Positions 151 through 28,879 are shown, numbered from the whole stretch's first letter. The stretch is DNA of 54,796 nt, filler included, from Sluysia triapertura (GCA_046118255.1; 4 parts of 4 records of this genome joined end to end with filler, not necessarily neighbours in it); one strand, 5' to 3'. Numbers and translations: made by a program. The notes: generated by a model not told the origin, from the sequence alone.

Positions 151-583
151 TTATTATTTTGATTTAGCGTTGGCTTGATATCAGTAAACAAGTTCGAAAA
201 CAATGTACTGGTTAGTATTTGCATTTCTTTGTGAATGGTTTTATTTAATTTTACAATACAATGAATTGTTACAAGCAGATACAGCTTGCTTTTTATAATT
301 ATATAATAAACTGTTAAAAACATAATATTTTTGTGAAGAATAAAACTGTTTTTTACCATTTATTAAAAATAATTAGTACTATTTATTTAGTGTGATAATG
401 TTGTTTATTTTGTGTACTTTGTTCATTTATATTTTTGTACAACCTCAATAAAATACGATACGAAACTAGAATTCACAGTTTTATTTTTTACTGCGATTAA
501 TTTTCAATTATAAAATCAAAAGGTAATTTTTCCGAATAATAATTAATAATTCAATAATAATTCATTCATTTCTGATGATTCAG

Positions 584-3500: not shown

Positions 3501-6500
3501 GAGGTCTGACTGAGACTCCTTAGTCAGATTCCGTTAGTCCTCCAGTCGCTGTGGCTGGTGTAGTCGCGCTCTTAATCCACCTTGTGTTTTGCCAATGTAC
3601 AAATTAATATTCGTCATTTTCAGAAATCGAAATATGCTACCGGCCAGCGCGGATCGACAGTTCTTGGAAAAGTGCCGCTATCTACCCGATTATGGAGTCG
3701 ACAAGCACAAAATTAAGGTACATCCTAATTCAGCAGTTTAAATGATTAATTTGAATAGGGCAAGAACAACATGGATTACAACTTAGGATTGACTCCTTCT
3801 GGTATTCTAATTTACGAAAATTCTGATAAAATAGGACTGTTTCCATGGAGTTGCTTGACAAAATTGTCGTTCAAAAAGAGTCGACTGAAGATCGTGGTTC
3901 ATGACGCGAAGGAAGATGCAGTTAGTTAATTGATAACAGTTAATTGATGACGTGCTTAATGAATCTCTGCTTCTATTATTGAAATGATTAGTAAATTCAA
4001 ACACATGTATTTTCGTTCCCCCGTTGAAAATTGTCCACCTTGTATTATTTGTCGTGGTCTTACACTAAGCAATCATAAAATGTTATCGATGTTTCAATAT
4101 TGCATCGTTGATGAGGTATTAAAACTCTGAGTTTGTCTCCTTGAAAGTGCGACACATAGTCCCGTAGTTCTAGTTCTAATAAATTATTTCTCTATGGAAG
4201 GATATATTCATCTTTTGGATGTATCTGTTTCAGAATCTGTTGATGCTGATTGTCAACATAGTAGGTTGTAGAATTTAACAATTCCAGAAACAACGTATTA
4301 AAATATTGAGTAAGATCCCTATTTAAGATAGTTAAATTCAAATCTTTGATGTTTCATGATTTTGAGCAATTCTCAAGTAATACGTCTTCGATAAACATGA
4401 GTAAACTCTTAGAATTCAGCGATCTCAATTACTGTTAATCTATAAATGAATGTGCTGTTACTAATTCAGAATGGTCAACTAGAACACATTTTCGTTTTTC
4501 GCAGTTCTGATGTCGGACACTGCAAGCAGTTGTGGAAATCTTGTGTTGAGCATCACGCCTTTTTCCGGTTAGAAGGAGGCCACAAGCCACCAACTAAGTT
4601 GGAGCAATTTTTTAGGTTGAAATCGAGGTTCTATGCTAGTTTGCGAACTGAATATCAGATGGCTGTGCGAAAAAGTCAGTTCGGAAGTACTCGGGGTGGT
4701 CGAAGTGTAACTGGTTCCACTGTTGGAAGTGGATCTAAGGGGTCCAGCTTTCATAGAACTCCTTCCCAGCGATGCGCACCAAGACCAAGTTTCTTAGTGA
4801 AAAATGAAGCAGAAAGGAAGATTGTACAACAGAAGTATCGAGATCAAGTGCGAGAAGAAATGAAGCAGCAAATGTTGAACAAGAAAATGAATAAGTTAGC
4901 CAGTCCGAAACCTACTAGCCAGTTCAAGACAGACGTGAGCACTAACATGCAGTTCAATCAGAATCCACGAGTTCTAGTTCTGAAACAGATGTCCAATATT
5001 TCTGATTCGACAAGTTCCACTTCTGAAGAAAACACTGACAGTCCGAAACAAGCGCATGTTTCTTATGTAGAATCCAGTCAAACAAATAAACCCAAGGTTA
5101 GTTCAGTGTACTTTTTTCATGATAATTAATGGATGATTTTTTAAGTATCATTATTGTCATTCAATTTGATGTCATCCCGAGGTATTGTTTCATATGTGTT
5201 AGATATCTAGGTAACTTCCCTATATAATTCTCTAGTAGCCGCACCGTACTGTTCATCACGCTTCTTATCGCTTGTACCGAGTGTGGTAGACATTACTCGG
5301 ATGAAGCATGGACCCAAATTCGGTACAAATCTAAAATAAAAATAAGTCTAAAAAGGTCCAAGCAAAGAAATGCAAGAGTGAATTCGTGAAATAAAAAGAA
5401 AACAAAAGAAAATAAAACATAATGTAAGAAAGTTAGATTAAAATTCGTCATACTTAATTACCAAGAGTTTTGAGTCGTGATTTCTGTTGCTAACCAACGC
5501 ATATTATCACAGTAATGCGCATATTAGAATCATGTTGAAGAAAGTAGGGATGCATATTAGAATTAACAATATTATAATTATTATTGCTATTCTTTATAAT
5601 GATGGCAATTCGTGTTTAGTGTTTGTTTACACTTTGACACCATTTTGGTGTTAGTGATGATGTTTTATGCTTTAATTTATGAATAATACGCGATTTGTCA
5701 TTATTTATTATCTGAATTATTAATTTGTTGACTTGGTTATTAAAATCTTTATCATCATCACTCTTAATAAAAACATTACTGAAGTGCTTAATGCACTTAG
5801 ACAATTCATTATTATTCTTAACGTTTAAATTGTAAATACGCAAATAACGAAAACAAATTTTATTCCTGTTAAAAACAGTCGCATAAAAAGAGGGCTTATA
5901 ATAATCAAATTGTACACAGGTCACTTTTTGATGTTGAATAAAACATTTTAGTCACTAAGATAAATTTATCTGATAATAGCCTTCATTACTCAACCTGAGT
6001 AATTTCCACTTAAAGATGTCAGAACAGCAACCTTGTCTGGTCGATACAATTATACGTACAAGATGTTTGAGCGATCAATACGTAATCGTAACGACTTGGA
6101 CCATGTGGGCAAGTTGTGATGTTGAGACGAAACATATGACTTTATTTCTAATTGTGTTAACGCGACGAAAAAACTATTTATCTCATTTAAAACGTCGAAT
6201 GCTACGTTGTTTGAAGGGTAGTTAATTATTAAAAAATAAAACCTAAAATTATTGACAACACATACACTCTTTACTACAAATAAGAATGTATGTAGTTAAT
6301 AACTACAAATAAGACAAAACAAATGTACATACTCTTGTATACAGACTAATTTCATACACGTTTAACAATTTTACTAAAACCAAAATATGAACATCGCACC
6401 GCATTAACACGTGAGCCTGACAACATACTCACATTTAGATGATCTAGGATTTTCATGTGTTTCTTGCATCTTAAATTGCCATGTTCGAGAATTAACAAAT

Positions 6501-9500
6501 CTGTTTACTCTCGCATACAGGTAATTTTATAGCACGTCGAACAATATTACTAAAACAAGCAAAACTTCATAATACATCTGACTAAACTAATAATCGGGCA
6601 TCAATTATAAAATTGCAAACAGTGGTCGCATAGTGAACAATCTGAACGTAATAACATAATATCTAGATCTGACATTTTAAATTATCTGTGGTTATCATAC
6701 ATCTCTTACATTTTAAATCTCCCTGTTCATCTAGTTTATCGCATTTCAAATAGCTTGCACGTGACTTGTCATGCCAACAATCTAAAACATTCGTAGGCGA
6801 TCGAATTACTATCGAAATAACAATCGTTCTACATGCAGAGCTGGCGTATTTACGTACTCAAACATTGCGATCATTTTATAAAACATTTTACAAAAATGTA
6901 TAAAAAATGCAAGAACAGAATAAAGCCTAATGTGTGCTATTAGCCGTCAAAGTGTTGTCTGCCATGAAATGGTAAACGGTGCTCATGATGGAGATATGTT
7001 CAAGCACTTCATTGTATCCCATTTTTCAATAGTCACCACGACTATTTATTGAATATGGATAACTGCAGATTCCATCATCGACAATATGTTTTGAGTCGCT
7101 TGACGTCCAATAGAATTGTTTATAAATTCCTTCCACCTTAAATTGCGGAATTTTTTGGAGTAATGAAGGACGTCAGACCTAGGCCAACAAATGCAACCGA
7201 AATTCAGAATGGTGTTGATAAAGAGTGGAGCAGCTATAATGAAAACTTATAACAATATGAAAAGTTACTTGATGCTGGGAATCAAAAGATCGCAGTTTAA
7301 ATAAATATTTGGCAACTTAGTTTTTGTCGACTTATTTGTTTCCGGAGATTATTTTTATATTTCTTAATGTTTTATAAATGCTTTATGAGAACAGATAATT
7401 CTTCCGCGGTTCTAATAGTTGTTCTTCTAATAATTGTTCTTCTAATAATTGTTCTTATAATTAGATAAGCTTGTTGAGAAGCACCACAATCTGTTAGAAA
7501 AAGATTTCCTGAATCCTATTTTTCTCTTAATGCATCATTTTTTCACTATCTATTGAAGCTGAAGAATGCGTTTGCAATGGAACCAAAGTTCTAAAAATAT
7601 CCCGTTCGTCAACGTCAGGATTAAAGCTAATCCTTTAAATAACATAATACTTTTTATTTTTAGAAGCACTTCAATTACAGGAGCTTTATCATGATATATG
7701 AAATTACTGTCATTGGTGCAGCCATTTAATTTCCCGCCAATTATGTTGCTCGAGAAACGAAATGATTCTTCAACTTAGTATCTTGAAATAACTTTGACAT
7801 TTTCCTCATGTGGTACGTTATCCCGTTTGATATCGCGGCTTTCATTTTATTTGGTTCTGCTAACATAGTTTCACTTCTCTTGCAATAAAAGTAATGTTTG
7901 CATATCGCAGAAACAAAATCGAATAAGCACAATATCTTGAACTAGAATGTTATAAAATAACACGATGATTACATCCTTCACAAGGGTTAGAATCAGAATA
8001 TGTTATATGTTTCAGTGGAGATTCGATTTTGATTAAGGAGTTTCCATTTTCATTATTTTATGAGGTCGGAGTTTTGGTGTCAGATGGTACAGGGATGTGG
8101 AGATGTAGCAGTAGCTGGTGCTGTCATTACTGTCTATCGCAAGAATGTTAAAGGTGCTGTATTATTTGTAGATTGTGTCATATTGTGATATTATTACTAA
8201 CTAATGACTTGTGGAGTTCGACTGGTTCTCATTTCTTATTTTATTTGTAGCCTTCTGGGAACACGAAAAATATCAAAAAGAATTTACCAACTGACAATAA
8301 CAATGCGACAGTTGCTGCTACTGTTGCTGGCCAAGATACCAATCAATCACGACCTGGTATCCATGTGACTAGTAACACACTGAGCAGTCCACCGTTAGTT
8401 TTATTTGTATAATTCTTTATGTAATGTTTTGTAGTGAGACTATTTAAGATGTCATTTATCCAAGATCATACCACGAGCCTCCCGCATTCATAACCTCCTC
8501 CATTTCCTATCCAATATAAAATCGGTGAGATGAATAGAACAATTAATAAAAACCGCATCATTTAAATTCTGTAGAATCTTCAAATCAAGCGTAACATTAG
8601 ACCTAGTATCTCGATGATCAATAAACATGATCAGTTTTAGGTGATGAAGTACTCATTTGTGAGTTGTTGAGTTAGCAAACTGCACACTAATAATAAAACT
8701 GAGATGATTAGAGTGATCTGAATTGATGAGTACCTTCACGACATTGCACCACTTTTCAGTAGCTTGTAATACATGCACGACAAAGTGATTAAAATAAGTT
8801 TTCTTCATTGATTATTTTCAAGTATTCATTTCCAAACCATTTTATCAATTCAGATACTAGTTCTATTGTTCTTTGAATAGTATTTTCTATGTTGTTCATT
8901 TCAAATTCAGTACATGTTTGGACGTCATCAGCATTTTTAAAACCATATGATTCGATTACACTTGAAACATCATTGATGCATATTATAAACAATAACGGAC
9001 CAAGTATTGATCCCTGAGGAACTCCATGCTTTCCATATACTTCTTTTGACTTCACATTAATCACATTACAGTTTCGTTTGACTAGCAATCAGAAAGATCT
9101 TCATAAATAAATAAGATAATGAAATGTGTAGTGATAATTATTATTCAACATGGATTGTTCTGTTCTTCGGTTGGATAGATAAGTAAATCACTGTAAACTA
9201 TGAAAATATGAAAAACTTTCTCTTAAAATTAAATTTGTTGAAAATGCAAGTGTCGGAAATTGGCACTGTTATGAAACATGAGTTCTTGCTTGGAACTACG
9301 ACATCGCAGACTGCTCGGAACATTAATAGAGTATCTGGCTCTAGTGTTACCATGGAGCAGTAATTTTGACTTCACGAATGAACCACGCGGTCGGCCAGAA
9401 TCGAAAGTCAGTGATGACGAACTGAAGGAACCTATCTCAGAGTTCCTATGAAAGAGTATTAACTGATTTATCTCAAATCGATGCAGTGGAAAAGTTGGAT

Positions 9501-10827
9501 AAGTGGGTTAAATGAAATGAGTTAAAAATCAAAATTAGAAACATCTGGAAGCTTTTCTAATTTGTGAATCGAATCATCCTTTGTGGTGAGAAATGGATCT
9601 ATACGTTCAGCAAAGTTGCTGGACAAGAGTGAATCACTGAGACACCCCACAAAGCAATGATGAGTGTTTGGTTGATTCATCAATAACAGACCAAGTGGAA
9701 ACAATGTAACAAGCTGAAGATGACGTAAAGGTGGAAATGGAAAAAGCACTTAGCCCTTTTTCGGTCCTATTTTATTTCCATTGAATCCACTACAGGTCCT
9801 ATTTAATTCCAACGAAAAAACAAAATTTTCACAATTAAATGAAATTATTTTCATACATTATTTTGACTAAGCACAAGTCTTGCGATTATTTTGCAGATTT
9901 AAATTAATGAAGTTCATTTTTATACATGATCATTATTTAAGAGTTAAGAAAACTTTAAGTGATGAAAGCTTTTGACCTTTGTTATATTATTGGACTTGAT
10001 GTGTAATCAGAACGGCCATGGTACACTAATCAACAGATTTGAGTTGTTGAAATCCGATTTTTATTTAATTTTACTTACTATTTATTGTTAGTAGAACAAA
10101 TTCTGATAAATTTAGTTTTCTAAATAGCAGATGCGAAATAATATTTTCAGAAATTATTTAATAATTTTTGAACAAAAAATCTAATTTAAAGTTGGGTTTG
10201 TCCGTGTTCATTGTCATTAATTTTTGCATTAAATGCTAATTATTATGCTAATTTTTAATTATAGTTAATTTAATGATGATAATAATTTCAGAGTTTCTCC
10301 CACGGCAGTGAAACCAGGCTATGTAAGTTAATTAAATGAATAACGCCCATTTTAATTGTGATTTTACTAAATAGAATTATTTAATAATGATCTTGCTTCA
10401 GGTTCCTACGGTCCAGAAGAGGACTATAAAACTACAAGCAGTTATCAATAATAGCAATAACAGGCCAGGCCAGCGATATAAGGAGGCTGAAGTTCGTAAT
10501 TTACATATTCTTAATAGTAAATTCATAATTGAGTTTGTCTTGCTGTTTTTCTCGTAAATCAGAAGCACTGTCCGTCCTTGATTCAAGGGTAATTCTTCGG
10601 AACAGCCATGTAGAGAGATTCTTTGAAGAACAAATCATGAAATATTAAAATATTAAAATCACAAATGATAAATTCATCCACTTAATTAATTAATTTATTT
10701 ATTAACTTATTATGCAAATTTAAAAAAAGTTTAATCTCCGCAACTCAATTATTTGTTGATTTTCTACAGTGACATGGTACTGCGCAAGATTAATCTGGAA
10801 CTCAACCAAGTGATCATCACTCACTGA
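584..10827 (+). CDS. FERM-domain protein, Yurt/EPB41L5/EPB41L4B-like (5' exons outside window)
   Basis: GT-AG exons with consistent phases: 584-766, 800-926, 3624-3717, 3759-3920, 4470-5096; less certain tail exons 8251-8393, 10292-10322, 10402-10491, 10563-10588, 10770-10827. Peptides GPPFALQFRVKFFSSDP..TRYLFVLQLK, ELGDY..SEFRF, YGVDKH, LGLTPSG..KIGLFPW, LWKSCVEHHAFFRL..FRLKSRF..RTEYQ match the EPB41L5 FERM and FERM-adjacent region. AATAAA near 10860. Confidence 0.9.
8789..9088 (-). mobile_element. Non-LTR reverse transcriptase fragment (intronic)
   Basis: GVPQGSILGPLLFIICIND followed by NADD (degenerate YADD). Confidence 0.85.
9240..9730 (+). mobile_element. Degenerate mariner transposase fragment
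   Basis: VMKHEFLLGTTTSQTARNINRV, DFTNEPRGRPESKVSDDELKE and KLDKWV motifs in shifting frames; boundaries approximate. Confidence 0.7.
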
Positions 10828-13548
10828 ATTATCTCCCAACAATTTGTCTAGATGTTCGAAATAAATACAAAATGATAAGAAATGATAATTGAAATGTGGC
10901 CCAATATTTGAATTTTATTTATTTACAATTCTGAAATGAAATGTCACTTTGTAAATAGTTTATTCGTATTTTCCAACTATGAGAACCGCACCAGATAATG
11001 AATTACGCTACTAAATAGGTGAAGCAAGTACCGGGATGCTGCTTGATAGATCTTCAGAAAATAGACTGAGTCGCTTTGTTTCGAAGTGACTGACAATTTA
11101 TTGAGGGTCGCAATAGAACAAGAGTTGTATTTGCTGTGTTGCGATACTTGAAAGGCACTTGAATATGTGCCCTGTAACTATGCTCCATTTTATAATTTAT
11201 GAAATATAATTTATGATATTTTTTGCTACTAATGTTAGTCAGTAAATTAATATTATCATTTTATTTAGGTTATTCAAGTATAAATAATCATCGTCTTCTC
11301 TTTCTCTAATTGATAAATTGTCTGAGTTAAGAGGTTCGTTCATTCTTTCATGTTGGCGCGAAGCGTGTCTCCGCATAGCACGCTCTCACATTACATTATT
11401 CCTCTTAATTTCTATTCAAATCGAATGAGATAAAGAATAATAATGTATTGTGGTTTGTTACTTGAAAAATGTCATTGATCGATTTGTTTTATTTCCATTA
11501 TTCTTTTTCAGATCCAGTTGGAAGAGGCGCCCTTGAAACAGTATTCAATTTGATATATACACTACCATATCTGTTTTTACTGTATTCTTTCATAATTTTA
11601 TTTTTGTTTTATCAATCAGTATTAATTTTATTTTATCTATTTCTTTTATTTTTATTTTTATTTATTTATCGAACTAATTTGTGCCTATTTAAACTGTTAC
11701 GATTATTCATTATTGATTCGATATGGAAATCACGACACATCGCACGTATCTGGACAAGTTCATTTGTGAAAAATGAGTGGCTACAAATTATTATTATTAT
11801 TATTATTTCAAGCTGTTCCTTGTTCCAGGACAACAGTCAGCATCTTTCTAATGTTATGTTAATTGTCAATAGAAATTAATTTTTCTTTTACAATTTGATG
11901 TAATAATAAAGGACTTCATTTGTTATTTTGTGTGTGTGAAATGTGTTTGCTCAGAAACCAGTGCCTTGTTTGATTTTTAAGTTTGCGTGACAAAATGATG
12001 CCGGAAGAGCATTTTGAACTGCGTCTTTATGCAACAGTTTTAAACTTGATATAGAAATCGAATATTACGGAAGATATTCGATACTAAACTAACTCGAGTC
12101 GATATGCATGTATATGTATAACGTCATTAACTCATAGCTTGCCGCTAGAAATTCTTGATCGAATGTTTGATGACAACACAAAGTTATTCTTTCACAAAAC
12201 GTACTACTACGTCAGCAGCTACTGAATTTCGAATAAAAAATGACGTATTACTACGTCAACAGTGAGCACCGAGTTAATATAGTGTGTATCGCGTGTAGTT
12301 CAGTTCGTAGTACGAGATTGCATTTTGTTGAATCAGCTGAATCGTATTTATTATATTAATATTTGAATTCGGTTTGGATATTTTACATATTCAATATTAT
12401 ATATAATATAGACATGAGTGGACACTTCTGCGAAGGTTTGATTGTGCTTTCAAGATTGCTTTCTAAATATAGATATTCGAAAATTCGGTGCGATCTGTTT
12501 CAGATCAAAGACACGACCTAATATAATACAGTATCCTACTGCATCGTAAGATATAGGGAGATTCACCAGCTCAATCTATTTATCGACTTTGCATACATGT
12601 ACAGGTAGTCGAACATGCTGTCTATTCATGCATCTGTGAACATGAAACGATTTGGTGCCATGGTGATAACGAATCACAAGTCGAACAGATTTCGTGGAGG
12701 GATGACAGAAACTGCTGTAATTAAATCTATAGTGTGAGGCGCTACAATAATAATTAAATATTATTGCAACAAATAATTTGATTAAATAAAATATATTTAG
12801 AACACAAGCAGAATACACTCTACACGATGGCTAATGCACAATTCATTACAATAGACAATTGATGTAATCGATAGCTCGAGGTCTATATCGAATTTTTAAT
12901 ACTCTATTGATTACTCTACTTCATTTACATGAGTGGTTGAAGTGGTGTAGAGGGAGTGTGTATCAGATGATCTAGATGAGTTTGTTGTGTAGATACTACT
13001 ATTACTACTACGACTAAGAGTAGGTGTTCAGAGTGCAGAAAAAAGTAAGAGAGAGAGAGAGAGACAGGAGTAGTTGTAGTGTTTGTGTTATTTATAAATT
13101 GTCGGGTCGAGTAAACATTCTGATTTATCTACAGATTTGGTATTACATAAAATTATTTACAAACGACGATTTTCAAAACTGATACATTTTAAAAACATTA
13201 CGTGAAGGGTCGAGTAAAGTTATTTTGATTATTTTTATTAAAATAAAATTTTATAGTTGGTACTTACAAAATAGTAGGCAGTCGATGGAACCATAACAAT
13301 GTTTCATTGTTTGATTCATTATCCACTCTTATTACACCTTATTCTGGGGCCCACTAATTTATAAATATTCGCAGCCTTGCGTCAGGAGTCGTTGCAAATT
13401 AGATAGATGCATTTAAAATGGGCGGCCAATCAACATTCAAGTCAACATATATTTACCAATCGTATTTTACATCACACAAGCACATATTGCCTTTGCATAC
13501 TTTTATGTAAAAAAAACGAAATAAGTTCAGCAAACGAGCCACTGTTCG

Positions 13549-13800
13549 TCAGTACACATTCCGCTTCATATCCGCCCGTTTGCCCCATGGCATGTCGTGC
13601 CAAGCAGCTCGTTTGAGCATGCGTATCCATGGATAACTCTCAGGAAATGGTCGTCTCAACATAGCATCATTGTACATACCTTCATCCAAGTGGCCCTGAG
13701 ACGCCTGATCGAGAGAAGCTGCCGCTAACAGTCCAATCATGAATAGCGAACCCATCAATAAAAGAACTTGAGCTCTCATAAATGACAAGCACAAATGCAT
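13549..13800 (-). CDS. npp-5: Neuropeptide precursor, flatworm PWamide (npp-5) family; mature AAWHDMPW-amide
   Basis: Hydrophobic N-terminal signal peptide; KR-AAWHDMPW-G-KR gives dibasic cleavage sites and an amidation Gly; resembles flatworm AAYMDLPWamide / WxDMPWamide peptides. Splice acceptor just upstream of the ATG. Confidence 0.85.
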   Translation of the reverse strand: MHLCLSFMRAQVLLLMGSLFMIGLLAAASLDQASQGHLDEGMYNDAMLRRPFPESYPWIRMLKRAAWHDMPWGKRADMKRNVY

Positions 13801-13965
13801 TATAATTCTGTAATCGAAATTCTGATGAAAACAACCATAGCTTATTATATTTATATAGATTAACGAACATGCTTACTAAAAAATTACAGGATATTGAAAT
13901 AGTCGATTTTTATTGGTTTAATTTATCATACTTGCACATGATTGGTTAATGATTGAATTGTCTCA

Positions 13966-13967
<2 letters not shown>

Positions 13968-14023
<56 letters not shown>
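13968..14023. repeat. (ATT)n microsatellite
   Basis: About 18 perfect units. Confidence 0.95.
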
Positions 14024-15655
14024 TTACGATGCACATAAAATCACTCTGGCTTCTGTAGTGGTACAGAAACGGAGGAAACATAACTCTGAAAAGGAAATAA
14101 TAAAATTTTATTTGAAAACAAATTTTTAGAGCTTGTTTCATACAAAATGAGAATGAATATTCCACCTTGAAATAGTTGCAACAGTTCTCTTTATTGTACA
14201 TATGTTGTTTGAATGAAACATAACAAGAAATAGATTTTCGATTTGTAGGGACGGCAACTGGGGTTTCTGTTGAATTTCGAACAGATAACACATTTGTAAA
14301 CATTATAATTTAAAGGTATAAAAGATTCCAGGACATTCGCATCTACTTAGTAAGAGTTAGTAAGTCAAGTTCGAAACTGGTGGAAATAGTGAGCGCGCTA
14401 TTCAAAAATGAGAATGCATCATTTGTAGTTGTGTAATAATTTTGAATAAGATTTATTTTAGGTTGATGAAACTTCAAAATTAGTTTATAAATGTCAATAA
14501 TTAACAATCAATAATCAATAATTATTATTCTATCACAAATCATATCTTTTCTAAAATTAAAATAATATGAAATAATGTTTACTTATCATTGGGAGTTGTC
14601 GACAATTTTAAATACCTCAGTATTTGTTTATTACTAAATATTATTATTAATTATTATTATTACTATTATTATTAACACTAAAATTATGATAGGGTTTTTA
14701 ATTGTATTCTCAAAAAAATTTATTAATACTTCACAAATATTGACCGATAGGTAATAATGGGACAATTTATTTACAATAATAATAATTATTATTATACGAT
14801 GAATCATATTATCAAAATATAAATAATGCTACAATAAGAAAATACTGATACATCTATCTTCAGTTATTGCGATGTTAATACTAATTGTACTCGACTCTAA
14901 TACTAATCGAATTTTACAAACACTAATCCTATCAGAAATTCTTCCTTATACATGCTGCAATTACTTCAAATTCATTGCCAAATAATTTTCTCTTAATTAA
15001 TAGTAATAAATTCGACTTTGCTCAATATTGATGTGGCTTTTCTGACACTTAACCTATGAAAAAATGTTTTGAGCAAAGTGGGCATTTCTGTAACTTGATA
15101 AGTTAATAAATACTTTAACTTTAATCTTAAAATTCGGATCTAACTAATCAATTAATGCTTAATGCTTACGTAATATATTTATTAAAATCTAAAATAAAAA
15201 CTAATAAATTAACAAATTTATATTGAAACACGATGCTGATAATAATTAACACGGAATTATTAAAAAAATATTGCAAGGGCAAAGCAGATTAGAAGTTAAG
15301 TAGCAGTAAAAATATTAAAATTCAAACCATCCAGGGTATTTAATTTGTATTTTTGATAATTTTGCGTAGATGTAAGCCTCAATATATCGTGAAACTTACT
15401 AAATATATACTTAAAATGGAAATATTTACATGGTTTGGGAAGTGTTGAAATAATTTATTAATTTAATATTACAAACTATTTCAATGATTATTAAAGAATT
15501 AAAATTTATAACTTTAGAATCATGATTTATTATTATAAGAAAATCAAATTGAAATAAATTGTGGTTGAATTTTTTCAAAAATAAATTCATTAAATCAACT
15601 ACAAAACAAAAATTTAACGTTAATAATCTTATGATGTGTAAAGTTTATCAATGTA

Positions 15656-17918: not shown

Positions 17919-18039
17919 ACGTAAACGGTGGGTAAAAATTCTGGGGGGTAAAATTACCCCCCCCCAGGTTGACTAAAACGTCACAATTACATTCGATTGA
18001 CGGACAAAGGTTAAACAATGTTCCAAATACCACTCGCAT

Positions 18040-18620
18040 CATTAAGAGCACGGACTAATCTTGGAATATAACTTTTCCAATGACGTCATTGCAAAATGCG
18101 GTGAACAGGTGATTTTGAAAAACCAAACTCACTGGAAGCCTGTCATAGAGACTTCCTTGGACTTTGCCGAAAACTTTCAAGTACTCTTTCTTCTTGTGTG
18201 GAGCGATTGGTATTCCTGAACGCTGTTTGTGAACATTTTGAACAGTTCCATCGGTTTCAAACTTATCTCGCGTCGGAATTTCAAAATCATCTTTACCTTC
18301 GCGATGTTAGGTCCTGTCCTTCCTTGACGAACACTTGTCAAACAAGTGGATTGGACGAATGGGGTTTTAGTGAATATCCTCCCCGTTCACCAGACTTCAC
18401 ACCACATAACTAGATTTTTTCTTATGGAGATACCTAAAAGACAAGTATATGCCAATAAACCTGCAACAGTGGCTTAATTGAGGGACATGAATGTGGCCAA
18501 ATACCGAAGGAATTGTTTCATGATGTGTGCGATTCCATTGCTTGGCTTTGTGAGCAGTGTCTGGGTCAAAATGGACGTCAGTTTGAGAACAAGCAAGTGA
18601 CATAATCAATAAATGATATT
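18040..18620 (+). mobile_element. Degenerate Tc1/mariner transposase fragment (WPPRSPDL..DFFLWGYLK class)
   Basis: YPPRSPDFTP..LDFFLWRYLKDK..YANKPATV across frameshifts. Confidence 0.75.
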
Positions 18621-20865
18621 TGTAAATACTTTTACAATTTTAAATCAATAAACTTCTGATGTCATGTTTACAATTATTTTTGATGTATATTTTTTGGGGA
18701 AAATCTGTATATTGTATTACGTTCTGTAAATAATTAATGAATTATCGATTTTATTAAGCTATAAATTGTTTTAAATTGTTCTGTAAAGCAAAGTAAAATA
18801 AATTAATGTAATACATACCACCTTGCTCCCTAATTGTGTTTGAAGATGACGTCATCAGCGGATGATTCTGCGGACCTTACATTAATCTGAAATGTGTCTT
18901 TATATTATGTGGTTTAGGAATAATATGAATGTCATTACTGCGGCTTGGATGATAATTTATCCAAGATTATATACGTATCATGAATCCTCATTCAGTTAGA
19001 CATAAAGTGAAGAAAACTATTAAATTATTAGATTCTCAAATAAAGTATTATATTGGTTTATTGAGCTTTTAGATAGCGCACAATTGATGGTATTCCATCT
19101 GTATAATATTGAATAATTTTTGAGCTTCACAGTCTAAACTTTGTTTACATACATTTACTTAAACTGTTGACAACAATCAGTAAGTAAAAATATAAAATAA
19201 ATAATTTCAGTTTTAGATTCTAGAAATATATATAAAACAACGTTTTAATAATTAATTAATAATTATTTTATTAGAAAGCATTTTAAGGTTAAATTAATTT
19301 TATTATTGATTTCCACACATTCAAAATCGATATACTAAACACTCAATCCTGACATTTATAATTGATATAAGTAGCATATTAAACAGAACACCATTGTTCT
19401 GAATAAGAAAGTTTATCCAAAATATATTACTATGAAAACCAAAACATTCTAAGATAATAAATGTAATGTCATGAATGTTACTATCAAAAAGGGGAAAAAT
19501 AGGACTGTGGTAACAGATTACAATATACAGAAAATATATAAAATAAAACCTATAATAGATACTAAAAATAGAACACACAAAGAAGTTTTATACAATAAAG
19601 GATAATTATTCTAACACGATTAGAAATACACTGTAACTGGACTTATGTTAAAAAGAAGTTTAAAACATTTTAAATTATCATTGTGTGTAGTGTTGACTCA
19701 GAAAATTATCTTTAACTTGAAAAGAAATGACGACAAAAATATTTCTATTAGTAAAAATGGACCATATTGAACACAGTGTTTACTAGTGTGTATTAATGTA
19801 GTCTCTCAATCACCAAATTAAAATATAACATTCTACTTAACAGCTAAGAATATTGTTTGTATGAATATTAATGTCATGAACAATTCAGATTTTTAGATTG
19901 GCAAAGTGAGACAACTCTGAAGGAGGGGGAAGTATCAACAAAAATTTTCATAGAGAATAAAAATAATATCGTAATATTTTTTTATTTTTAACACAAGACT
20001 TACCTTAATTTTCTATGGTAAGTAGCAAAGTTGTAATATTTATTTGTTTAATTAGCTTGCCAGCAAGCAGTACGAACACGAAGTGTATCATCTGAGAGAC
20101 AAATAATACAATGTAGCCCGTAGGATTTTCATAAATATAAAATTTAACTTAATTCTAATAGTCGGGACTTTTGAAAAACGTCACGAGACGCGGGACAAAT
20201 TGCGAAAAAGCAAAACGTCTGGTCACTTTAAACATGATATTATGATAAGCAAATTACGGTTAGAGCCGTCATGAGTTTCCGGAAAATATGTGATAATATT
20301 TTAGTTTTTAGACATACAAGTGATGTTTATTTGCTTCAGGCAGCAGCATCAAATAATTTTAAAAAAGGATGATGAAAAAAAGTATATGTCAACATGTTAA
20401 TAATTATCACAAATTTGTAGTAAAAGAATGTTTAGTTGAATAATTAGATCAAACGAAAAATGTGATTCAACATTGTTTCATCTATTTGAAGAACGACTTC
20501 CGGCCCCACTCAATTTGAATTTCTTTAAAGACTATTTTTTAAATTATTTTATTTATAGAACTGAAAGAATGATCACTTACTATTTGATATCTTTGTTACC
20601 TATCCAGGATTATTTATCCATTGATCTGACAAATTTTACCAAATTTTTATTGATAATATTTAAAAAAACACAAAACAGAGTCTTTAATGTTTAATTTTAT
20701 ATTATTATTTAATTTTTATTTAAAATTTGCGATTTTCTGTTAATAGAAATAAAAATCTCCGGAGGATTTTGAATAACTCAAACATATAGCAATAAATAAT
20801 AATACTTTCGATTATAATATAATTCGAAAGAAAACAAAAGTTTGTTCAACTTTATTTTGCTTCAG

Positions 20866-21944
20866 ATGAATCTTCGTCTCTTTTAGTACCCCAGTCAGAC
20901 AAAGATAGTCGTCTAAAACGTAATAATCACTGTTCATTTGCTGTTTGTCTTACTGCTCTTCAAACTGCTGTTATGGCAACTCTTTTAATCGTACTAATAG
21001 TACTTGTCATAATAATAATGTTAGTAATATATCGAAAACATCAACATCAAAATCATCATCACCATCACCATCAACAGCATCAACATCAACAACAACCATC
21101 CTCATCAACACTTTCCTATCGACAAGACTCAAATCCACAATCGAGTCGTCAAGCAACATTATCAAATACATATTCAAATTTACCATTATCTGCCGATATA
21201 AGTGCTCCATCGAATATGACTCTTCCTCTTCCATCATACACAAATAAATTGGATCTCTTTTCATTTCAACCATTCTCGACGAATTTAGATTCGATATCTG
21301 ACGATAAAAAGATCGTCTATCCTTTAGTAAGTCAAAATACTTTATCACAAATACAAGCTTTACAATCTTTACCACAAAGTACAATACCAAATTCTACTTT
21401 TCCGATACGACACAGGTTTCTAATATTTTATTATTTTAATTTTTCATTTAGATGTTTAACAGAAAATGAAGAAGTTATTTACAATAACAGTTCTAATCCT
21501 ATTATTATAACTCAACAAACACCACCTATAACAACGTTATCGACCTCATCAATAATCAACCGTAGTAATAATACTAATACATTATCATGTCCAAGGCATC
21601 CTTACCAACAATTTCCACATCAACGTTTTCATACTCAAACACTACACCAAACACCACCACCACCACCACATCAACACCATCACCAACATCATCACAATCA
21701 TCATCATTATTCGCAACATCGAGACATTCAATTAGTTAATGATTTTGATTCGTCAGACAATCAACCAATCAGAATTATTGATCAACCACAAAAAAATATT
21801 ACACAAACGCCCACGCAACCTTACATAAGAATAATTGAAGATTCCAGTAGTTCAAATAATGCTGTATCACAAAATTTAGTCATAACAACACAACAACAGA
21901 CACATACAAACATATCTCAAACATCAGCATCAAGTATTTTGTAA
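20866..21944 (+). CDS. 3' exons of a single-pass membrane protein with a His/Gln/Ser/Thr-rich cytoplasmic tail
   Basis: Acceptor ttcag at 20865; TM segment LLIVLIVLVIIIMLVIY followed by RK; 36-nt GT-AG intron 21416-21451; stop at 21944. Upstream exons unresolved and family not recognisable. Confidence 0.7.
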
Positions 21945-22626
21945 ATTAATAAAAATCAAACGAAATATTAATATTTTCATTGAAAAGAAACTATATTATC
22001 TATTATTATCAATTATTATTATTATTATTAATATTATTACGATAACTATTACTATTATTATTATTATTGTTATATTTTATATGCAGGTTGTGTATAAAAA
22101 AATTAAAATACTAAATTTAATTAAATGAATTATTTATATGCTGTGATATTGTCTTCTTCAGTTCATCCTCAAGTGAAAGTTCTTTTGAACTTTTTTAAAT
22201 CTCACATTGTTTTCACTCAGAATTTTTTTTCGCTTTTATTTATGCACCTATTTTGTTACCATGGTTACTTTGCTCTTTAAACTACAGTTTTCTGTAAATC
22301 CATTTTTAAAATTATAAAAAACATAAATATGCTGAAAATAAAATATTTTTAGGTTTATGATTTATGATTACCTTGTCTTTGATCCAATAAATGAATGTAT
22401 ATATATATATCTAAAATATAATTGGCGGATATTTTCAATAATCCAATGACTTTCAAAGATGTGTCTATTCATGTTTATTTAATTAAAAATAATTAATTTT
22501 TCTTAGTTTTTAAATATTAATTATAATTCATTTTGATTTGTTAATTTTTAAATATTTTCAGAATCTTCACCTGAAGTATCATAATTTCGAATAAATTTAT
22601 AAACTAATTTAAGTATTGCTCACTAA

Positions 22627-22819
22627 NNNNNNNNNNNNNNNNNNNNNNNNNNNNNNNNNNNNNNNNNNNNNNNNNNNNNNNNNNNNNNNNNNNNNNNNNN
22701 NNNNNNNNNNNNNNNNNNNNNNNNNNNNNNNNNNNNNNNNNNNNNNNNNNNNNNNNNNNNNNNNNNNNNNNNNNNNNNNNNNNNNNNNNNNNNNNNNNNN
22801 NNNNNNNNNNNNNNNNNNN
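22627..22819. other. Sized scaffold gap (193 N)
   Basis: Plain N run without a linker. Confidence 0.95.
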
Positions 22820-24527
22820 TACCTTTTTCTTATTCTCTTATTTTTCTTTTAAATTTCAACTAGTACAAATTATACAAATGACAAATAAGAAAAAGAATGT
22901 TGGAACACATGAATCACCGTTGAAAGGAATTTCTATTAAAATTTCTTTTATGAAGAAAAATACATTTTTGTGATTGTTTTCAATTTAATAATTCGATAAG
23001 TGACACACTATTTCCCGTTAATCAAGAAATATTAATAATATTAATACACTGTAGTATTGTAAACATTGTCACATGTTTTATTCAGGTTTTACTCGGAATA
23101 ATTTTCCCGAAATTAAATAGGTATATAAATTACCACTAGCTAGTATTAGTCACATGCTATAAAAATTGAACCTGAGCGAGTAAATATGCATAAGAAACAA
23201 ACTAAACAAAATTGTTTGACGGGCTGATTGCTCAGTGATCAGAGCATCGAACTGCGCATTTTATGATAAAATAATAAACTCAAGTTTGTATGTGAATTGC
23301 ATAGAAAATTGCAGCAAATTGTTTACTAAAATTAATTAAATATGAAAATTTCTTCTATTATAATCATAATAAAAATGTTTAAAATATTATATAAATTTAT
23401 TTTTCTTTGAAAAAATATATTCATATTTATCATTAAACTAATTAAATTAAGCTTGATATTGACATTTAAGAGCTAATTATAGATTCAGTATAAACTAATA
23501 TTATTACATTTTTAGTATATAAATCTAATTTAATTTTTTTGTTAAATATCAAGTTTAACGTTTTGACATTTACAATATGACGCAGTACGATAAATGATGT
23601 TAACCAATAGAAAGGTTTTAAAATTTCCTTTAAATTTAGATAGTAAAATCCCAATATAATATAATCGTAAAATGTGGATAGGTTTAGGAAATACATATTT
23701 AAATAAAATAAATTGTTTCTGCATAAACTATTTATTAATAAATTAATAAATGATTTTAACATATGGAATTTTTAAAACAAATTTAGAGTGAAATAATTTT
23801 CACATTGATTTTGGTTATTTTTAAATAATGATATTTATCATGTGATAAAATTATTATATTCAAACTTCTCAATTGAAATGATCTAAAAAAAACCCGAAGA
23901 TTATAAAAATATAGAAATGAAAATAAATGCTTACAAGTATAATACTAATAATTTTGATTCTTAAAATAAATAAATATAATGCAAATACATTTTTAAAAAT
24001 ACATTTTCGTAGTTGTCTCCAATAAATTATTAATAAAATTGATTAAATCTGATTAGTTAATCAGTTATGCATAACGTGGTGTATGAGTTAGTGATAAAAT
24101 GGATAAATATTTTTAATTCCACATGGAACTTAAAAAACAAAAGAATTCTTGTGATTCATCGGCAATACGTTTTTAAACTTATTTTATGTAATTAGTTATT
24201 ACGTCTTTTAAAAACAAAAAAATATGTTTGATCATTTTAAGTAACAAAAATTACCGACTACAATGTTAAATTTGAGATAAAAGCAAAACAGCAGTTGCTA
24301 CCAGTGCAATCTTTTTTATACACACTTTACAACTCAAAATATTGTTTAAATACTTAGAAAATTCACCAAATATTGTTTTCTAACTTACTTTGTTTTTAGT
24401 TTCATTATATATCGGTATTATTATATTATTTTAAGATGATAAAGTTATAACATTTTAAATTAATAATATAATGAAATATTATTTTACGTAAAATATCGAG
24501 GAGATAATTGAAATATATACATATATA

Positions 24528-25158
24528 TAACCAAACCGCAAACTTAAATAAAAATTAGATATCAAATACGACAAATGCAATTTCTTCTTTATATTATTAT
24601 CTTCGCTACTATTCATTTCCTTCTGCGAATAATAGTCTTTAGAATGACTTTTGTTGTGTGATCTTATTGATTTTTGTTCAGCGAGCGTTTCTGGATCCGC
24701 ATTCTTAAAAATGCAGTGAAGGACTTTAGATTTAAACGAACGTATCTTCGTTATTATGACTTACTGTGCAAGGACTAGTTATAAGCATGTCGAAGAAAGA
24801 TGGGAGCAAACTTCAGAATACCTGTACCGTGTACGTCGACAATGTTCAATCTTGTATCGAAATTGTAAGTTACTGGAAATATCTCAAAATCTCCTAAAAA
24901 GGTCGTCCGACAACATTTCGTTCATCTGAAAACAGGGATATAGTGACAGCTGCATTTGCTCATTCTTCCAAAAAATCTATCCGTCAGGTATCTTGCATGA
25001 CTTTGGTCTAAAACCATGCCCTAAATGAGGATGACCCAGATAAACGATTCAGAATTTTGTGAGAACTTTGTACTATTTTGTGAAGAATCACAAATTTTTC
25101 CAGATTTCAGAGGAAACTTGCCACAAAGATATTGTGCTTGTATTGAAGTTCAATGTGG
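24528..25158 (+). mobile_element. Left part of an internally deleted Tc1/mariner element (family of the MITE at 38074)
   Basis: aaccaaaccgcaaacttaaataaaaattagatatcaaa matches the TIR at 38091; transposase N-terminal relic (ERIFVIMTYC, GRP, KKSIRQVS) and C-terminal CIEVQ. Confidence 0.8.
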
Positions 25159-25261
25159 TGACCAACCTTTTCATTTAAAATTCAAAATCATTATTTCATT
25201 TGTAATATCACATTTATTAACATTTTACTTTTTACCTTTTCACACTTTAAAACATTGTAAA

Positions 25262-25980
25262 TTCACAATCTTATAACATTAAAATTATACTCATATTGAA
25301 AACCATTAATGTACATTTTAAATTATATCCAAAACATTCCAGGTTCATAATCCTTCAACACTCAATCTTTAATATAACCGAAAAACATTAAATTCACATT
25401 TTGAAACCATTTTAAACATTGCAATTAAATTGGCATTTCTATAACATGTTTATTTATGTATTATTTTCTTAAAACATTCTTTTATCAGCTCTTTCCACAT
25501 TTCATATCTCTGTAATCACCGAATAAGTTTATTTCAAAGAAATTATGAATTAAAACTAATATTGCAAAAAGCAGTTAACGAAAGAAGTTTATTCAAACGA
25601 ATTTAAGCTAAATCGAAATCCATCATTGTTATGTAAAGAACTTTAAAATAATGAAGATAAAAAAGAATTTTATTTTAAAGAAAAGAAATTCAAGAAGTTT
25701 ATGTTTAAAAGAATTTATTTACAATAAAAGATTTGTATGTTAAGAAATAAGGAAATAAATTAAAAGAATACAGTTTATGTATTTCATTTTCATTTTATTT
25801 ATTCAATTTATAATAATAATAATTATTATTATTATTAACATTAATTTGTTAATTGTATTTTTAGTCTGTCCCAGTCGATAGTTTAATTAAAATCAACTCA
25901 ACCTACCTTGTTAACTGCCAACAGATGGCAGTTGCCTAGTGTGTAAATAATTTTATTTATAAATTAATATGATTGGTAGA
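25262..25980 (+). promoter_or_regulatory. Shared upstream module, copy B
   Basis: Homologous to the reverse complement of 17180-17695. Contains an AAAGAANTTT array (25581-25717), a perfect hairpin aactgcca-acaga-tggcagtt (25913-25933) and ATTGG at ~25972. Confidence 0.6.
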
Positions 25981-26154
25981 TATGCTACAGTTATAACACA
26001 ATATACATTACACACATATGTGTATTTTTATTACTAGTCCTACTATCGCTACTCCTACTAAGTAAAAAAGCAATAACATAAGAAGTTATTTTAAGAAGCA
26101 ATTCACATAGTACATTATAAAATCATTTATAATTACTTTCATAGTTCCAAATAA

Positions 26155-27721
26155 ATGTCTTCTGTGGATAAAATCATTTTACAAAAAACATGAACGAAAA
26201 TATGTCGATGCTTCTAGTTCTACTTCTATTTCTAGCAATCCATTTGTTTCATCAAGAATGGTAATTGTGCCTGATGTGGAAGATCACTCATTTACTCATG
26301 AATACACTGAGTACGATATTGAAATAGTTGTTAAAGGAAATTATGATTCAAAACGCTTGACAAAATTAGTAAACTCCAGTAGTGACAAGATGTATTCATT
26401 TAACAATATCTACATGATTGAAAACGATAATAACAATTACGATCAATGCGATGATAAAGACAAGCCTGATTTTTCACTTGAACTCGAAAGTGATTTTTTT
26501 TAGATAAATTAATTAACTGTCAAGGACTTCATGAAAGTAAATATGAAAATATCATACCTATTATTGGTTCTGAAATTAACAAGCAGATTCATTTAGTGAA
26601 AAATATAGAGTCGTATCATTATGAAGCTGGATGTAAACACACAGAAGAACGTAATGTTCTTAATGATGAATTTCTACTCCATCTCTCACGTGACAAACTA
26701 ATATTTAATTTAGTAAAAAAAATGAAAACAGATTCCTGTATTACAGTGACTTGAAATATATATTTCCTACTATCCTAGATGTCGTTGAATTTCATAGCAA
26801 ACAGCAGCATATTTTGTCATCAAAGTCAGATGTAGAAATATATCATCAAACTGATAAGAATTGTATCGTTATTGCTACTAAGTAAGCTACCTGAATCTAA
26901 ATACCGAAAAACAATTACATCAGACCGATTTCATAGAAGTTGCAATGAAATAATTATGAAAGGCTCACATGTATTGCCAAGTCCCTTATGTAGTATGAAC
27001 AAAATTTTAAATGACCTAATTCTTAATGATGATAAAGCATTTTTTAAACCTGTCAAAACAAGTATTAAATTCTTAGTTAAAAAATTCTTGAATTCAAAAA
27101 ATCGATCTTACACTATTCCTACTTATCATTTACAATTGACCGATTCTAAAGATGTATCCGAACGAGATACACCGTTGTGCATCATATAATGAAATTGTAT
27201 GCTTAGAAAACTTTCCCGAATTAGTAACAATATACTATATATGTGATCTAATATCTCAAATAGACCATGATAAAGCTGTTATTAATCGTGCTGTGTCATT
27301 TTTATCATCTAAGCCCATATGGCATATGATTTTACGTAAACAATTAATATTTAAATCAATACAGATTATATCGCCTACAACATTAAAGGAAAAACATATC
27401 GAGTTGATGTTATCATTGTTGAATAATGCTATATGTTTTCAAGCATACGTTAAAGATCAATTTCATTTTATATCTGGTAGTAACGTTATTTTATCCAACC
27501 AAAAATGTATGGGACAATGCCCACCAGAGTTAGATGCATTTGGATTATGCATAAACTTTGACACATGCTGCCAGTATTACCACGACATCTACCAAATGAA
27601 CTGCAGTAAACGAGAAATAGACGAACGCAAACAAAGAGTATACAATCTATTAACGTCATTACGTTCCAGAACAGTGGTTTCCAGCATTGTTTCCAGTACA
27701 AAAACACTAACTCTTATCTAG
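26155..27721 (+). pseudogene. Orphan ~520-codon gene broken by about five frameshifts
   Basis: ORFs 26258, 26872 and 27152 plus the intervening open frames (LDKLINCQGLHESKYENIIPIIGSE.., YYSDLKYIFPTILDVVEFH..) tile continuously from ATG 26155. Cys-rich C-terminus CMGQCPPELDAFGLCINFDTCC. No family recognised. Confidence 0.7.
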
Positions 27722-28023
27722 TTAGTAGTTGTAATTTCCTTCATCCTTATCATTTATATTTCAGGACTCTACAACCGAACAGATCCAGCACGTATCAAAA
27801 GTAACTCAAAATTTTTGATAATATGTGTTATAGAATTTAGTTGTTTTAGATTTAATAATAAAAGTTTATGTTTTGACTTAAATAATGTCTTAAATGATAA
27901 AGTTTAAAAAGTAAATTTATTAAATTCATTTCTTAATAAATCAATAAACTTTCCTAATTTAACATATTGTAATGTGATATTAACTAATAACTTTACAAAT
28001 ATAATTTCAAAACATTTAACTCC

Positions 28024-28120
28024 AAATTCAAAGTGGACATTTTTAAATACTAATTATACCTCTTAATTTCGTCGTTTTTGATATATAATTTTTATTTGTG
28101 TTTATTTTTGGGACAGTCAG
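28024..28120 (+). mobile_element. Right end and TIR of the Tc1/mariner element that begins at 24528
   Basis: ttcaaagtggacattttt..aaatactaattatacc..gtcgtttttgatatataatttttattt..ttttgggaca is colinear with 38422-38535. Confidence 0.8.
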
Positions 28121-28879
28121 CCATTTAAGGCGAAGAATATAGCAGATGCAATAGACAGTTTAATGTTATTTTATATTAGTCAAATAATTATTAATTAATT
28201 TTACGTAGCATTAATATATAAAACTTTACACAAATATATATAAACTAAGAGCATCACAATTAAAATATAATCAAGTTTGAACGAAACAGTAACTAAATTT
28301 AATTCTTCAAAAAAATCGAATCTAATGCAAGGCATTCCACACAATGTCGTTAGAAATAAAATATTCAATTGTAATTGGTTCACTTTATCAATTATTTATT
28401 TGTTGTTGGAAAATTAGAAGTGAAATTTCTCGTAAGTAGAAATTTTCTAATTACACTTGTCCCATTAAACTATTATCGATAAACTGTATGCAATCAATAC
28501 ACACCTAAATCCTTTGACTTTACTTATCTGAAAACTAAATGTCAAACACACACACAATCTAATATTCTAATTATAATTGATGTGACTAATTAATTTCACA
28601 TTATACATTTCTTTCTATTAATTTAATCTACAAGTTGAAATAATGTAAATGTCATACGGTGTAAATTATATATATAAATTATATACACCTTTTTGATAAT
28701 TCATAAGATTAAAGGAATTATTACATGGCAATTTTAACATGAAATGAATAATAATTATTGTAAAAAATAATATTTTAATTAAATTTTTTTAATTATGTGA
28801 TATTTGTATAAAAAATAAAGCAATAAAAGAATTAATAATAATAATAATAATAAATACTATTTGAAATTTAAATAAAAAG

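What the first reader, a model, noticed from the sequence alone, without database searches (positions are those of the whole stretch)
25146..28036. 2.87-kb gene cassette splits a Tc1-like element with a 13-bp duplication
Seen: the intact MITE reads aagttcaaggtgg-acatttt (38422-38434). Here the left half of the same family ends at aagttcaatgtgg (25146-25158) and the right half restarts at aaattcaaagtgg-acatttt (28024-28036). The module plus orphan gene (25159-28023) is therefore a discrete insert flanked by a duplicated 13-mer. No clear TIR or poly(A) tail is present; only a 12-bp inverted match taatatcacatt lies about 41-44 bp inside each end, and it may be chance. Inference: the cassette is itself mobile or was captured at a break, and it is now bracketed by Tc1 TIR remnants (Pack-Tc1-like).
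Basis: seen in the sequence. Interest (0 to 1): 0.75.

Follow-up and report, generated by a model that had tools for sequence, protein, structure and literature searches.

The report
Repeat block splitting an old mariner-type element
A worn-out mariner-type jumping gene in an AT-rich animal-like genome is split by 2.9 kb of other repeated DNA carrying a broken gene with no known relatives; this is most likely an ordinary nested insertion, not a working gene-carrying transposon.

Summary
The 13-mers lie at 25146-25158 and 28024-28036 and agree at 11 of 13 places. A perfect 12-nt inverted match lies 44 and 41 nt inside the block. The block ends have no inverted repeat and no poly(A).

The flanks are two parts of a decayed Tc1/mariner-type element. 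They have paired inverted-repeat arms, and the left part holds weak remnants of the transposase N-terminus. This element can no longer move: its left tip is missing and its right tip is mutated.

The 2,865-bp block is not a single-copy host gene. It begins with a roughly 1000-copy ACATT-rich stretch. The rest is repeated tens of times and holds a coding region of about 520 codons, broken by 4-5 frameshifts. No relative of that coding region turned up in any search.

The best reading (0.5) is a secondary insertion flanked by an imperfect 13-bp duplication. "Pack-Tc1" mobilisation is not supported.

The decisive test, comparison with other copies of both families, could not be run.

The parts
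24528..25158 (+). Left part of a decayed, internally deleted Tc1/mariner-type element. Its terminal ~17-19 nt are missing.
   Evidence: Summed contig depth jumps from 92 to 70,674 at 24527. 97 contigs of other copies continue leftwards with ...TACAGGGTGTCCCAAAAG. tblastn with the transposase of L002 gives collinear weak matches: aa 35-63 at 24812-24898 and aa 123-135 at 25015-25053.
24540..24575 (+). Left inverted-repeat arm of the element
   Evidence: It pairs with 28068-28103 over 36 nt at 86% complementarity (I10).
25146..25158 (+). 13-mer copy 1 (aagttcaatgtgg). It lies in the remnant of the transposase codons around K-L/F-N-G, in the region of the first catalytic Asp.
   Evidence: Read. 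The frame comparison with ..DEASFKLNGIVN.. of the L002 transposase uses.
25159..25540 (+). ACATT-rich, degenerate minisatellite-like block present in very many copies
   Evidence: There are 9 ACATT motifs in 250 nt, all on the + strand, against about 1 per 250 nt elsewhere. TRF finds a 23-nt period at 25239-25286. Summed depth is 12,675-14,235 and falls gradually to 233 by 25628.
25203..25214 (+). Left copy of the perfect 12-nt inverted match, 44 nt inside the block
26155..27721 (+). Decayed coding region of about 520 codons with no known relatives, in five stop-free pieces: 26135-26500, 26494-26751, 26709-26882, 26836-27186 and 27140-27718.
   Evidence: The 193-codon open stretch was never reached in 1000 Markov simulations, and G content falls over codon positions 1>2>3. 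Neighbouring pieces overlap in different frames. Three breaks lie at A6, T8 and A8 runs and two do not. All homology searches were blank.
27722..28023 (+). AT-rich 3' flank of the coding region, with AATAAA motifs and no poly(A). It holds the right copy of the 12-nt inverted match at 27971-27982.
28024..28036 (+). 13-mer copy 2 (aaattcaaagtgg)
28037..28122 (+). Right end of the mariner-type element, with the arm 28068-28103 and a mutated tip (ttttgggacagtcagcc).
   Evidence: I10. The stretch 28037-28066 differs at 3 of 30 places from the reverse complement of the consensus of 51 contigs that run on behind 24576; I read these as right ends of other copies. A 906-nt contig with no differences covers 27946-28200 and so bridges the junction at 28023/28024 (record 8).
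24119..24131 (-). Third, 12/13 copy of the 13-mer (aagttccatgtgg), in the opposite orientation and 400 nt upstream of the element
   Evidence: The chance of such a match anywhere in the piece is about 0.02. The sequence around it is only marginally alike.

Best explanation
An old, now immobile, internally deleted Tc1/mariner-type element was split by a later insertion of 2,865 bp from other repeat families. The element belongs to a lineage with long inverted repeats and the tip CAGGGTGTCCCAAAAGTAACC.

The inserted block has an ACATT-rich, very high-copy stretch at one end. The rest is a moderately repeated unit that carries a frameshifted coding region of about 520 codons with no known relatives.

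The insertion left an imperfect 13-bp duplication of the target. A duplication of that length, with no terminal inverted repeats, fits a staggered-nick or target-primed insertion (LINE-endonuclease type), or repair of a staggered break. It fits a cut-and-paste transposase less well.

Shown: the element, the block, the repeats and the copy-number mosaic. Inferred: that the block arrived in one event, and how it was inserted.
For: - The flanks are two parts of one mariner-type element: inverted-repeat arms (I10), transposase N-terminal remnants in the left part only, and the family tip seen in 97 contigs.
- That tip is shared with a full 1.75-kb element, L002, which encodes a DUF4817 + DDE_3 transposase.
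- Both parts differ from other copies by about the same amount: 3 of 30 places for the right part, and 30 of 251 for the left part (loose end at 24576 and record 2). This fits one element rather than two insertions of different age.
- The inner parts of the two halves have similar summed depth: about 5,900 for 25035-25161, and about 6,500 back-calculated by me for 28024-82 from the bins.
- The block has no mariner homology.
- The 13-mers sit exactly at the two junctions, with nothing alike on either side of them.
- The block is repetitive, with summed depth of 160-14,235 against 11-16 for the two exact single-copy contigs.
- The 12-nt inverted match at nearly equal distance from both ends is unlikely by chance. 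This suggests that the ends of the block are real ends of a unit.
- The right junction is reproduced in an independently built contig (record 8).
Against: - The empty-site form of the family (13-mer followed directly by acattt) could not be seen in my data. No joint from 25158 to about 28037 is among the 15 joints listed, though 76 more are unlisted.
- An 11/13 pair near the junctions is not rare by itself (18% of shuffles).
- The high-copy stretch at 25159-25540 has twice the depth of the adjacent mariner part. A relative, L002, also carries an AT-rich minisatellite inside its inverted repeat. So this stretch could be native to the family and continuous with the left part.
- Depth is very uneven along the block, which fits a mosaic better than one homogeneous mobile unit.
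- A third 12/13 copy of the 13-mer at 24119-24131 hints that the motif is a recurrent repeat end and not a random target.
- The block has no poly(A) or other mark of retroposition.
Confidence: 0.5

Rival explanations
1. There was no single insertion. The ACATT-rich stretch belongs to this mariner family's own subterminal region and is continuous with the left part. The coding-region unit and the right inverted-repeat fragment are separate repeat fragments that piled up in a repeat-rich region. The 11/13 match is chance.
For: - Depth of 25162-25415 (12,675-14,235) is higher than that of the adjacent mariner part, not lower.
- L002 has an AT-rich minisatellite just inside one long inverted repeat.
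- An 11/13 pair near the junctions arises in 18% of shuffles.
- No joint across 25158 to 28037 is listed.
Against: - The two mariner fragments have the same orientation, similar divergence and similar depth.
- They carry paired inverted-repeat arms.
- The 13-mers sit exactly at the two junctions.
- The 12-nt inverted match is placed symmetrically inside the block.
- None of the listed joints crosses 25158.
Confidence: 0.25
2. Capture rather than insertion, in the Pack-mariner style. In one version, foreign DNA was copied into the element by template switching while the gap left by excision was repaired. In the other, two neighbouring copies were remobilised from their outer ends. The 13-mer would be the overlap synthesised from both sides. 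The composite may then have moved as a unit.
For: - The block lies exactly where the element's large internal deletion lies, between the transposase remnant at about aa 157 and the inner edge of the right inverted repeat. Gap repair would put filler DNA there.
- Pack-type elements, including Pack-Mariner in rice, and the model of tandem insertion followed by remobilisation are described in PMC8903248 and PMC6379663.
Against: - Both tips of this copy are damaged.
- No host parent gene was found for the cargo.
- Depth of the flanks and the cargo differs by 10-100 fold.
- Gap-repair junctions usually show microhomology of a few nt, not a 13-bp duplication.
Confidence: 0.15
3. Assembly artefact: a repeat-induced misjoin placed the block between two halves of a high-copy element.
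For: - Both junctions lie in high-copy sequence.
- An assembly gap is nearby at 22628-22819.
- All breaks in the coding region are frameshifts, three of them at homopolymer runs, which suggests indel-prone long-read sequence.
Against: - A 906-nt contig from run X1 with no differences bridges 28023/28024 (record 8).
- A 323-nt exact contig lies inside the block (record 4).
- X1 may, however, be the same sample that the window was assembled from.
Confidence: 0.05

Closest known systems
Nested transposon insertion into a MITE or other internally deleted Tc1/mariner element
   Same: The host element has inverted-repeat arms, transposase remnants and thousands of relatives. An unrelated repeat sits inside it, flanked by a short direct duplication.
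   Different: The inserted repeat has none of the marks of a known class: no terminal inverted repeats, LTRs, poly(A) or recognisable enzyme. The 13-bp duplication is longer than that of the known cut-and-paste superfamilies (from general knowledge, not tested here).
Pack-TYPE transposons: Pack-MULE, Pack-CACTA and Pack-Mariner of plants (PMC8903248, PMC6379663)
   Same: Non-transposon coding DNA lies between the ends of a DNA transposon.
   Different: The tips are damaged. The cargo has no identifiable host parent gene and is itself a repeat family. No second copy with the same ends could be shown. The organism looks like an animal-type genome, not a plant.
LINE-mediated (target-primed) retroposition, as for processed pseudogenes and SINEs
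   Same: The flanking duplication is in the 7-20 bp range, the coding region has no introns, and there are no terminal inverted repeats.
   Different: There is no poly(A) or microsatellite tail on either strand. About 1 kb of non-coding DNA lies upstream of the coding region. The high-copy end lies on the side that would be the 3' end only if the RNA were antisense to the coding region.
Long-inverted-repeat Tc1/mariner element L002 (metagenome contig Ga0184627_10057904)
   Same: The terminal 21 nt are identical to the family tip inferred here, the flanks are TA, the inverted repeats are long, and the DUF4817 + DDE_3 transposase aligns weakly with the window's left part.
   Different: L002 is complete (1.75 kb, intact 352-aa transposase) and comes from another organism. 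Apart from the tip, its DNA is not alike.

Membership tests
Tc1/mariner-derived non-autonomous element (the host element) | Terminal inverted repeats of the family | tested here: met
   The arms 24540-24575 and 28068-28103 are 86% complementary. The family tip CAGGGTGTCCCAAAAG is seen in 97 contigs and recurs in L001 and L002. In this copy the left tip is missing and the right tip is mutated.
Tc1/mariner-derived non-autonomous element (the host element) | Remnants of a DDE/D transposase with N-terminal helix-turn-helix domains | tested here: met
   The matches to the L002 transposase (DUF4817 + DDE_3) are weak but collinear, with E = 0.024 and 1.8. Pfam itself finds nothing in the remnants.
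Tc1/mariner-derived non-autonomous element (the host element) | TA target duplication at both ends | tested here: inconclusive
   The left end is truncated at 24528 next to a TA-rich run, and the right tip is degenerate. L001 and L002 do show TA flanks.
Pack-TYPE transposon (Pack-Tc1/mariner) | Both inverted-repeat ends intact so that the unit can be mobilised | tested here: not met
   The left 17-19 nt are absent and the right tip is mutated.
Pack-TYPE transposon (Pack-Tc1/mariner) | Cargo derived from a host gene that exists elsewhere | tested here: inconclusive
   No relative of the coding-region pieces was found in any protein search. The cargo is repeated tens of times, but the places of those copies could not be read.
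Pack-TYPE transposon (Pack-Tc1/mariner) | Further copies with the same cargo between the same ends | not testable with these tools
LINE-mediated retrocopy | Flanking target duplication of about 7-20 bp | tested here: met
   13 bp, agreeing at 11 of 13 places, at both junctions.
LINE-mediated retrocopy | 3' poly(A) or simple-repeat tail next to one duplication | tested here: not met
   Neither end has such a tail on either strand.
Cut-and-paste DNA transposon (the block itself) | Terminal inverted repeats at the ends of the block | tested here: not met
   There is no in-register terminal match. There is only a 12-nt subterminal inverted match, with P of 0.0005-0.006.
Endogenous mitovirus-like RNA polymerase | Similarity to the mitovirus RdRp profile | tested here: not met
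   The Atlas feature hits of 0.93 were not borne out. A profile of 80 mitovirus RdRps from IMG/VR, run with all filters off, scores 26836-27186 at -1.2 bits. That is inside the range of shuffled controls. Pfam PF05919 is also not hit.

The most novel reading that the evidence does not exclude
The 2.87-kb block is a copy of an undescribed kind of mobile element. It would have one protein of about 520 aa with no detectable relatives among 1.8 billion representative proteins, no terminal inverted repeats, LTRs or poly(A), a short subterminal inverted motif, an ACATT-rich array at one end, and 13-bp target duplications.
Probability: 0.1. Interest if true: 0.7.

Novelty: new member of a known kind. 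Interest (0 to 1): 0.25.

Why it matters
If the main reading holds, this is routine repeat archaeology: one repeat nested in another in a repeat-rich genome. Its use would be for repeat annotation and for dating.

Two points have some further value. First, the coding region belongs to a repeat family of tens of copies and has no relative in any library searched. Second, its flanking duplication is unusually long for a DNA transposon. If genome-wide copies showed defined ends and their own 13-bp duplications, that would define a new lineage-specific mobile element.

The finding gives no evidence that mariner-type elements shuttle genes in this genome.

Tried and rejected
- **Other copies inside the piece:** none. 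The mariner remnants at 17919-18610 belong to a different family at the DNA level.
- **Other copies in public collections:**
  - The junction pattern found nothing in metagenome contigs.
  - The family-tip pattern found only L001 and L002, from other organisms.
  - A subterminal 25-mer found nothing in genome contigs or viral contigs.
- **Closed or exhausted tools:**
  - The look-up of sequencing runs gave a single run of contigs and no RNA.
  - Read laying allows one call and prints truncated tables.
- **Identity of the coding region:**
  - Pfam was blank on all five pieces.
  - Three word searches were blank.
  - The full HMMER search of the 189-aa piece gave 0 hits.
  - The search of PDB sequences gave only noise.
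  - The AlphaFold model had pLDDT 35, so I did not run a fold search on it.
  - The Atlas hits to rotifer hypothetical proteins at 0.82 are noise-level.
  - The Atlas lead to viral RNA polymerases was rejected with a filter-free profile and shuffled controls.
  - A read-through of the broken frame with X at the breaks was not attempted.
- **Tiny introns instead of frameshifts:** a 14-nt gt..ag stretch would fix the first break. The matching 19-nt stretch at the second break gives the wrong frame. Rejected.
- **tRNA or Rfam SINE heads:** none.
- **Similarity between the block and the mariner halves:** none.
- **Literature search for the tip sequence:** nothing.

Full report
**Scope.** Only 17919-28879 of the window is real sequence for this finding. 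It is AT-rich (GC 0.13-0.42, mostly 0.2-0.3) and looks eukaryotic. The organism is coded and I could not name it.

**Observation.**
- The two 13-mers are at the stated places and agree at 11 of 13 positions.
- The 12-nt inverted match is real. It lies at 25203-25214 and 27971-27982, that is 44 and 41 nt inside the block.
- The block ends have no poly(A) and no in-register terminal inverted repeat.
- An 11/13 pair somewhere within +-50 nt of the two junctions occurs in 18% of shuffles. Nothing is alike before or after the 13-mers. The 13-mer therefore counts only through its position.
- The 12-nt inverted match has a chance probability of about 0.006, or about 0.0005 if the two offsets must agree within 5 nt.

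**The host element.**
- The arms 24540-24575 and 28068-28103 are 86% complementary (I10).
- I laid the contigs of the only available run (X1) at 80% likeness. Summed depth jumps from 92 to 70,674 at 24527. 97 contigs of other copies continue leftwards with ...TACAGGGTGTCCCAAAAG. This copy therefore lacks its left tip.
- Its right tip (ttttgggacagtcagcc) is mutated relative to that motif.
- A scan of metagenome contigs with the inferred tip found two loci:
  - L001, a 130-bp MITE with TA flanks.
  - L002, a complete 1.75-kb element with long inverted repeats and a 352-aa transposase. Pfam finds DUF4817 and DDE_3 in that transposase.
- This transposase aligns weakly but collinearly with the left part only. 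Residues 35-63 match 24812-24898, and residues 123-135 match 25015-25053.
- The first 13-mer falls on the remnant of the codons for K-L-N-G of ..DEASFKLNGIVN... The left part therefore ends at about residue 157 of 352, and the right part is little more than the right long inverted repeat.
- 51 contigs run on behind 24576. I read them as right ends of other copies laid on the left arm. Their consensus differs from 28037-28066 at 3 of 30 places. A contig of another copy differs from the left part at 30 of 251 places.
- The two halves are thus about equally diverged.

**The block (25159-28023).**
- It has no mariner homology.
- It is a mosaic of repeats:

| Stretch | Summed depth |
|---|---|
| 25162-25415 | 12,675-14,235 |
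| by 25628 (gradual fall) | 233 |
| 25670-27955 | 98-1,772 |
| two exact single-copy contigs, for comparison | 11 and 16 |

- The tool warns that summed depth is not a copy number, so I use it only for orders of magnitude. That gives about 1000 copies for the first part and tens for the rest.
- The first part is an ACATT-rich degenerate array, with 9 motifs on the + strand in 250 nt against about 1 elsewhere. It has a 23-nt period in places.
- From 26155 to 27721 the + strand holds a coding region of about 520 codons in five overlapping stop-free pieces.
  - Its 193-codon piece is never reached in 1000 simulations.
  - G content falls over codon positions 1>2>3.
  - The breaks are all frameshifts. 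Three lie at A6, T8 and A8 runs and two do not. Either the copy has decayed or some breaks are indel errors of the assembly.
- Contigs of other copies differ by about 10% and carry their own indels.

**What the protein is.** No search found a relative.
- Pfam on all pieces gave nothing.
- Three word searches gave nothing.
- HMMER against 1.84 billion representatives gave 0 hits.
- The search of PDB sequences gave only noise.
- The single-sequence fold had pLDDT 35 and was unusable.
- The Atlas gave noise for one piece and a lead to viral RNA polymerases for another (0.93).
- I tested that lead. A profile of 80 mitovirus polymerases taken from IMG/VR, run without filters, scores the piece at -1.2 bits. 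That is inside the shuffled controls. The lead is rejected.

**Reading.**
- The simplest account is a secondary insertion into an old mariner-type element, with a 13-bp target duplication that has since diverged at two places.
- A duplication of that length fits target-primed or staggered-break insertion. This rests on general knowledge of duplication lengths and was not tested here.
- Against a clean single insertion stand four points:
  - the uneven depth along the block;
  - the ACATT array, which is more abundant than the neighbouring mariner part, while L002 also carries an AT-rich array inside its repeat;
  - the absence of a joint from 25158 to about 28037 among the 15 listed joints, with 76 more unlisted;
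  - a third 12/13 copy of the 13-mer at 24119-24131 on the other strand (chance about 0.02).
- The block sits exactly at the element's large internal deletion. That keeps a gap-repair or neighbouring-insertion capture model alive (PMC8903248, PMC6379663).
- This copy cannot move, and nothing shows that the composite ever did.
- A 906-nt exact contig bridges the right junction (record 8). I saw no such evidence for the left junction.

**Limits.**
The decisive comparison with other copies of both families was therefore not possible.

**Verdict.** The feature is real and most likely ordinary. Interest is 0.25.

Noticed in passing
window 17919-18610: Remnants of a second, different mariner-type element in a rearranged state. 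The C-terminal transposase part is on the + strand (18311-18602..PPRSPDFTP....CEQCLGQNGRQFE). The N-terminal part is on the - strand (18038-18211). This suggests an inversion or two head-to-head fragments. At the DNA level it is not alike to the element at 24528.
   Followed up: partly
window 20860-21944 (+): An open frame of at least 323 codons, with one transmembrane-like stretch followed by His/Gln-rich low-complexity runs. It is probably a host gene. Pfam gives only weak membrane-protein noise.
   Followed up: partly
window 24119-24131 (-): A 12/13 copy of the junction 13-mer (aagttccatgtgg), 400 nt upstream of the element and in the opposite orientation. The chance of such a match in the piece is about 0.02. 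The upstream context is marginally alike (35 of 500 shuffles reach the score). It may be a small fragment of the same family that ends at the same ...gtgg.
   Followed up: partly
L002 191-1941 and L001 481-628: Metagenome contigs from other organisms hold a complete long-inverted-repeat mariner-type element and a 130-bp MITE. The complete element has a 352-aa transposase and an AT-rich minisatellite at 300-480. Both share the same 21-nt tip and have TA flanks.
   Followed up: partly
window 22628-22819: An assembly gap (run of N) lies 1.7 kb upstream of the element.
   Followed up: no
window 26305-26431: Inside the coding region, one sub-stretch has several times the summed depth of its neighbours (1,772 against about 180-470, with 33-40 contigs). 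Part of the coding region therefore also exists as many separate fragments.
   Followed up: no
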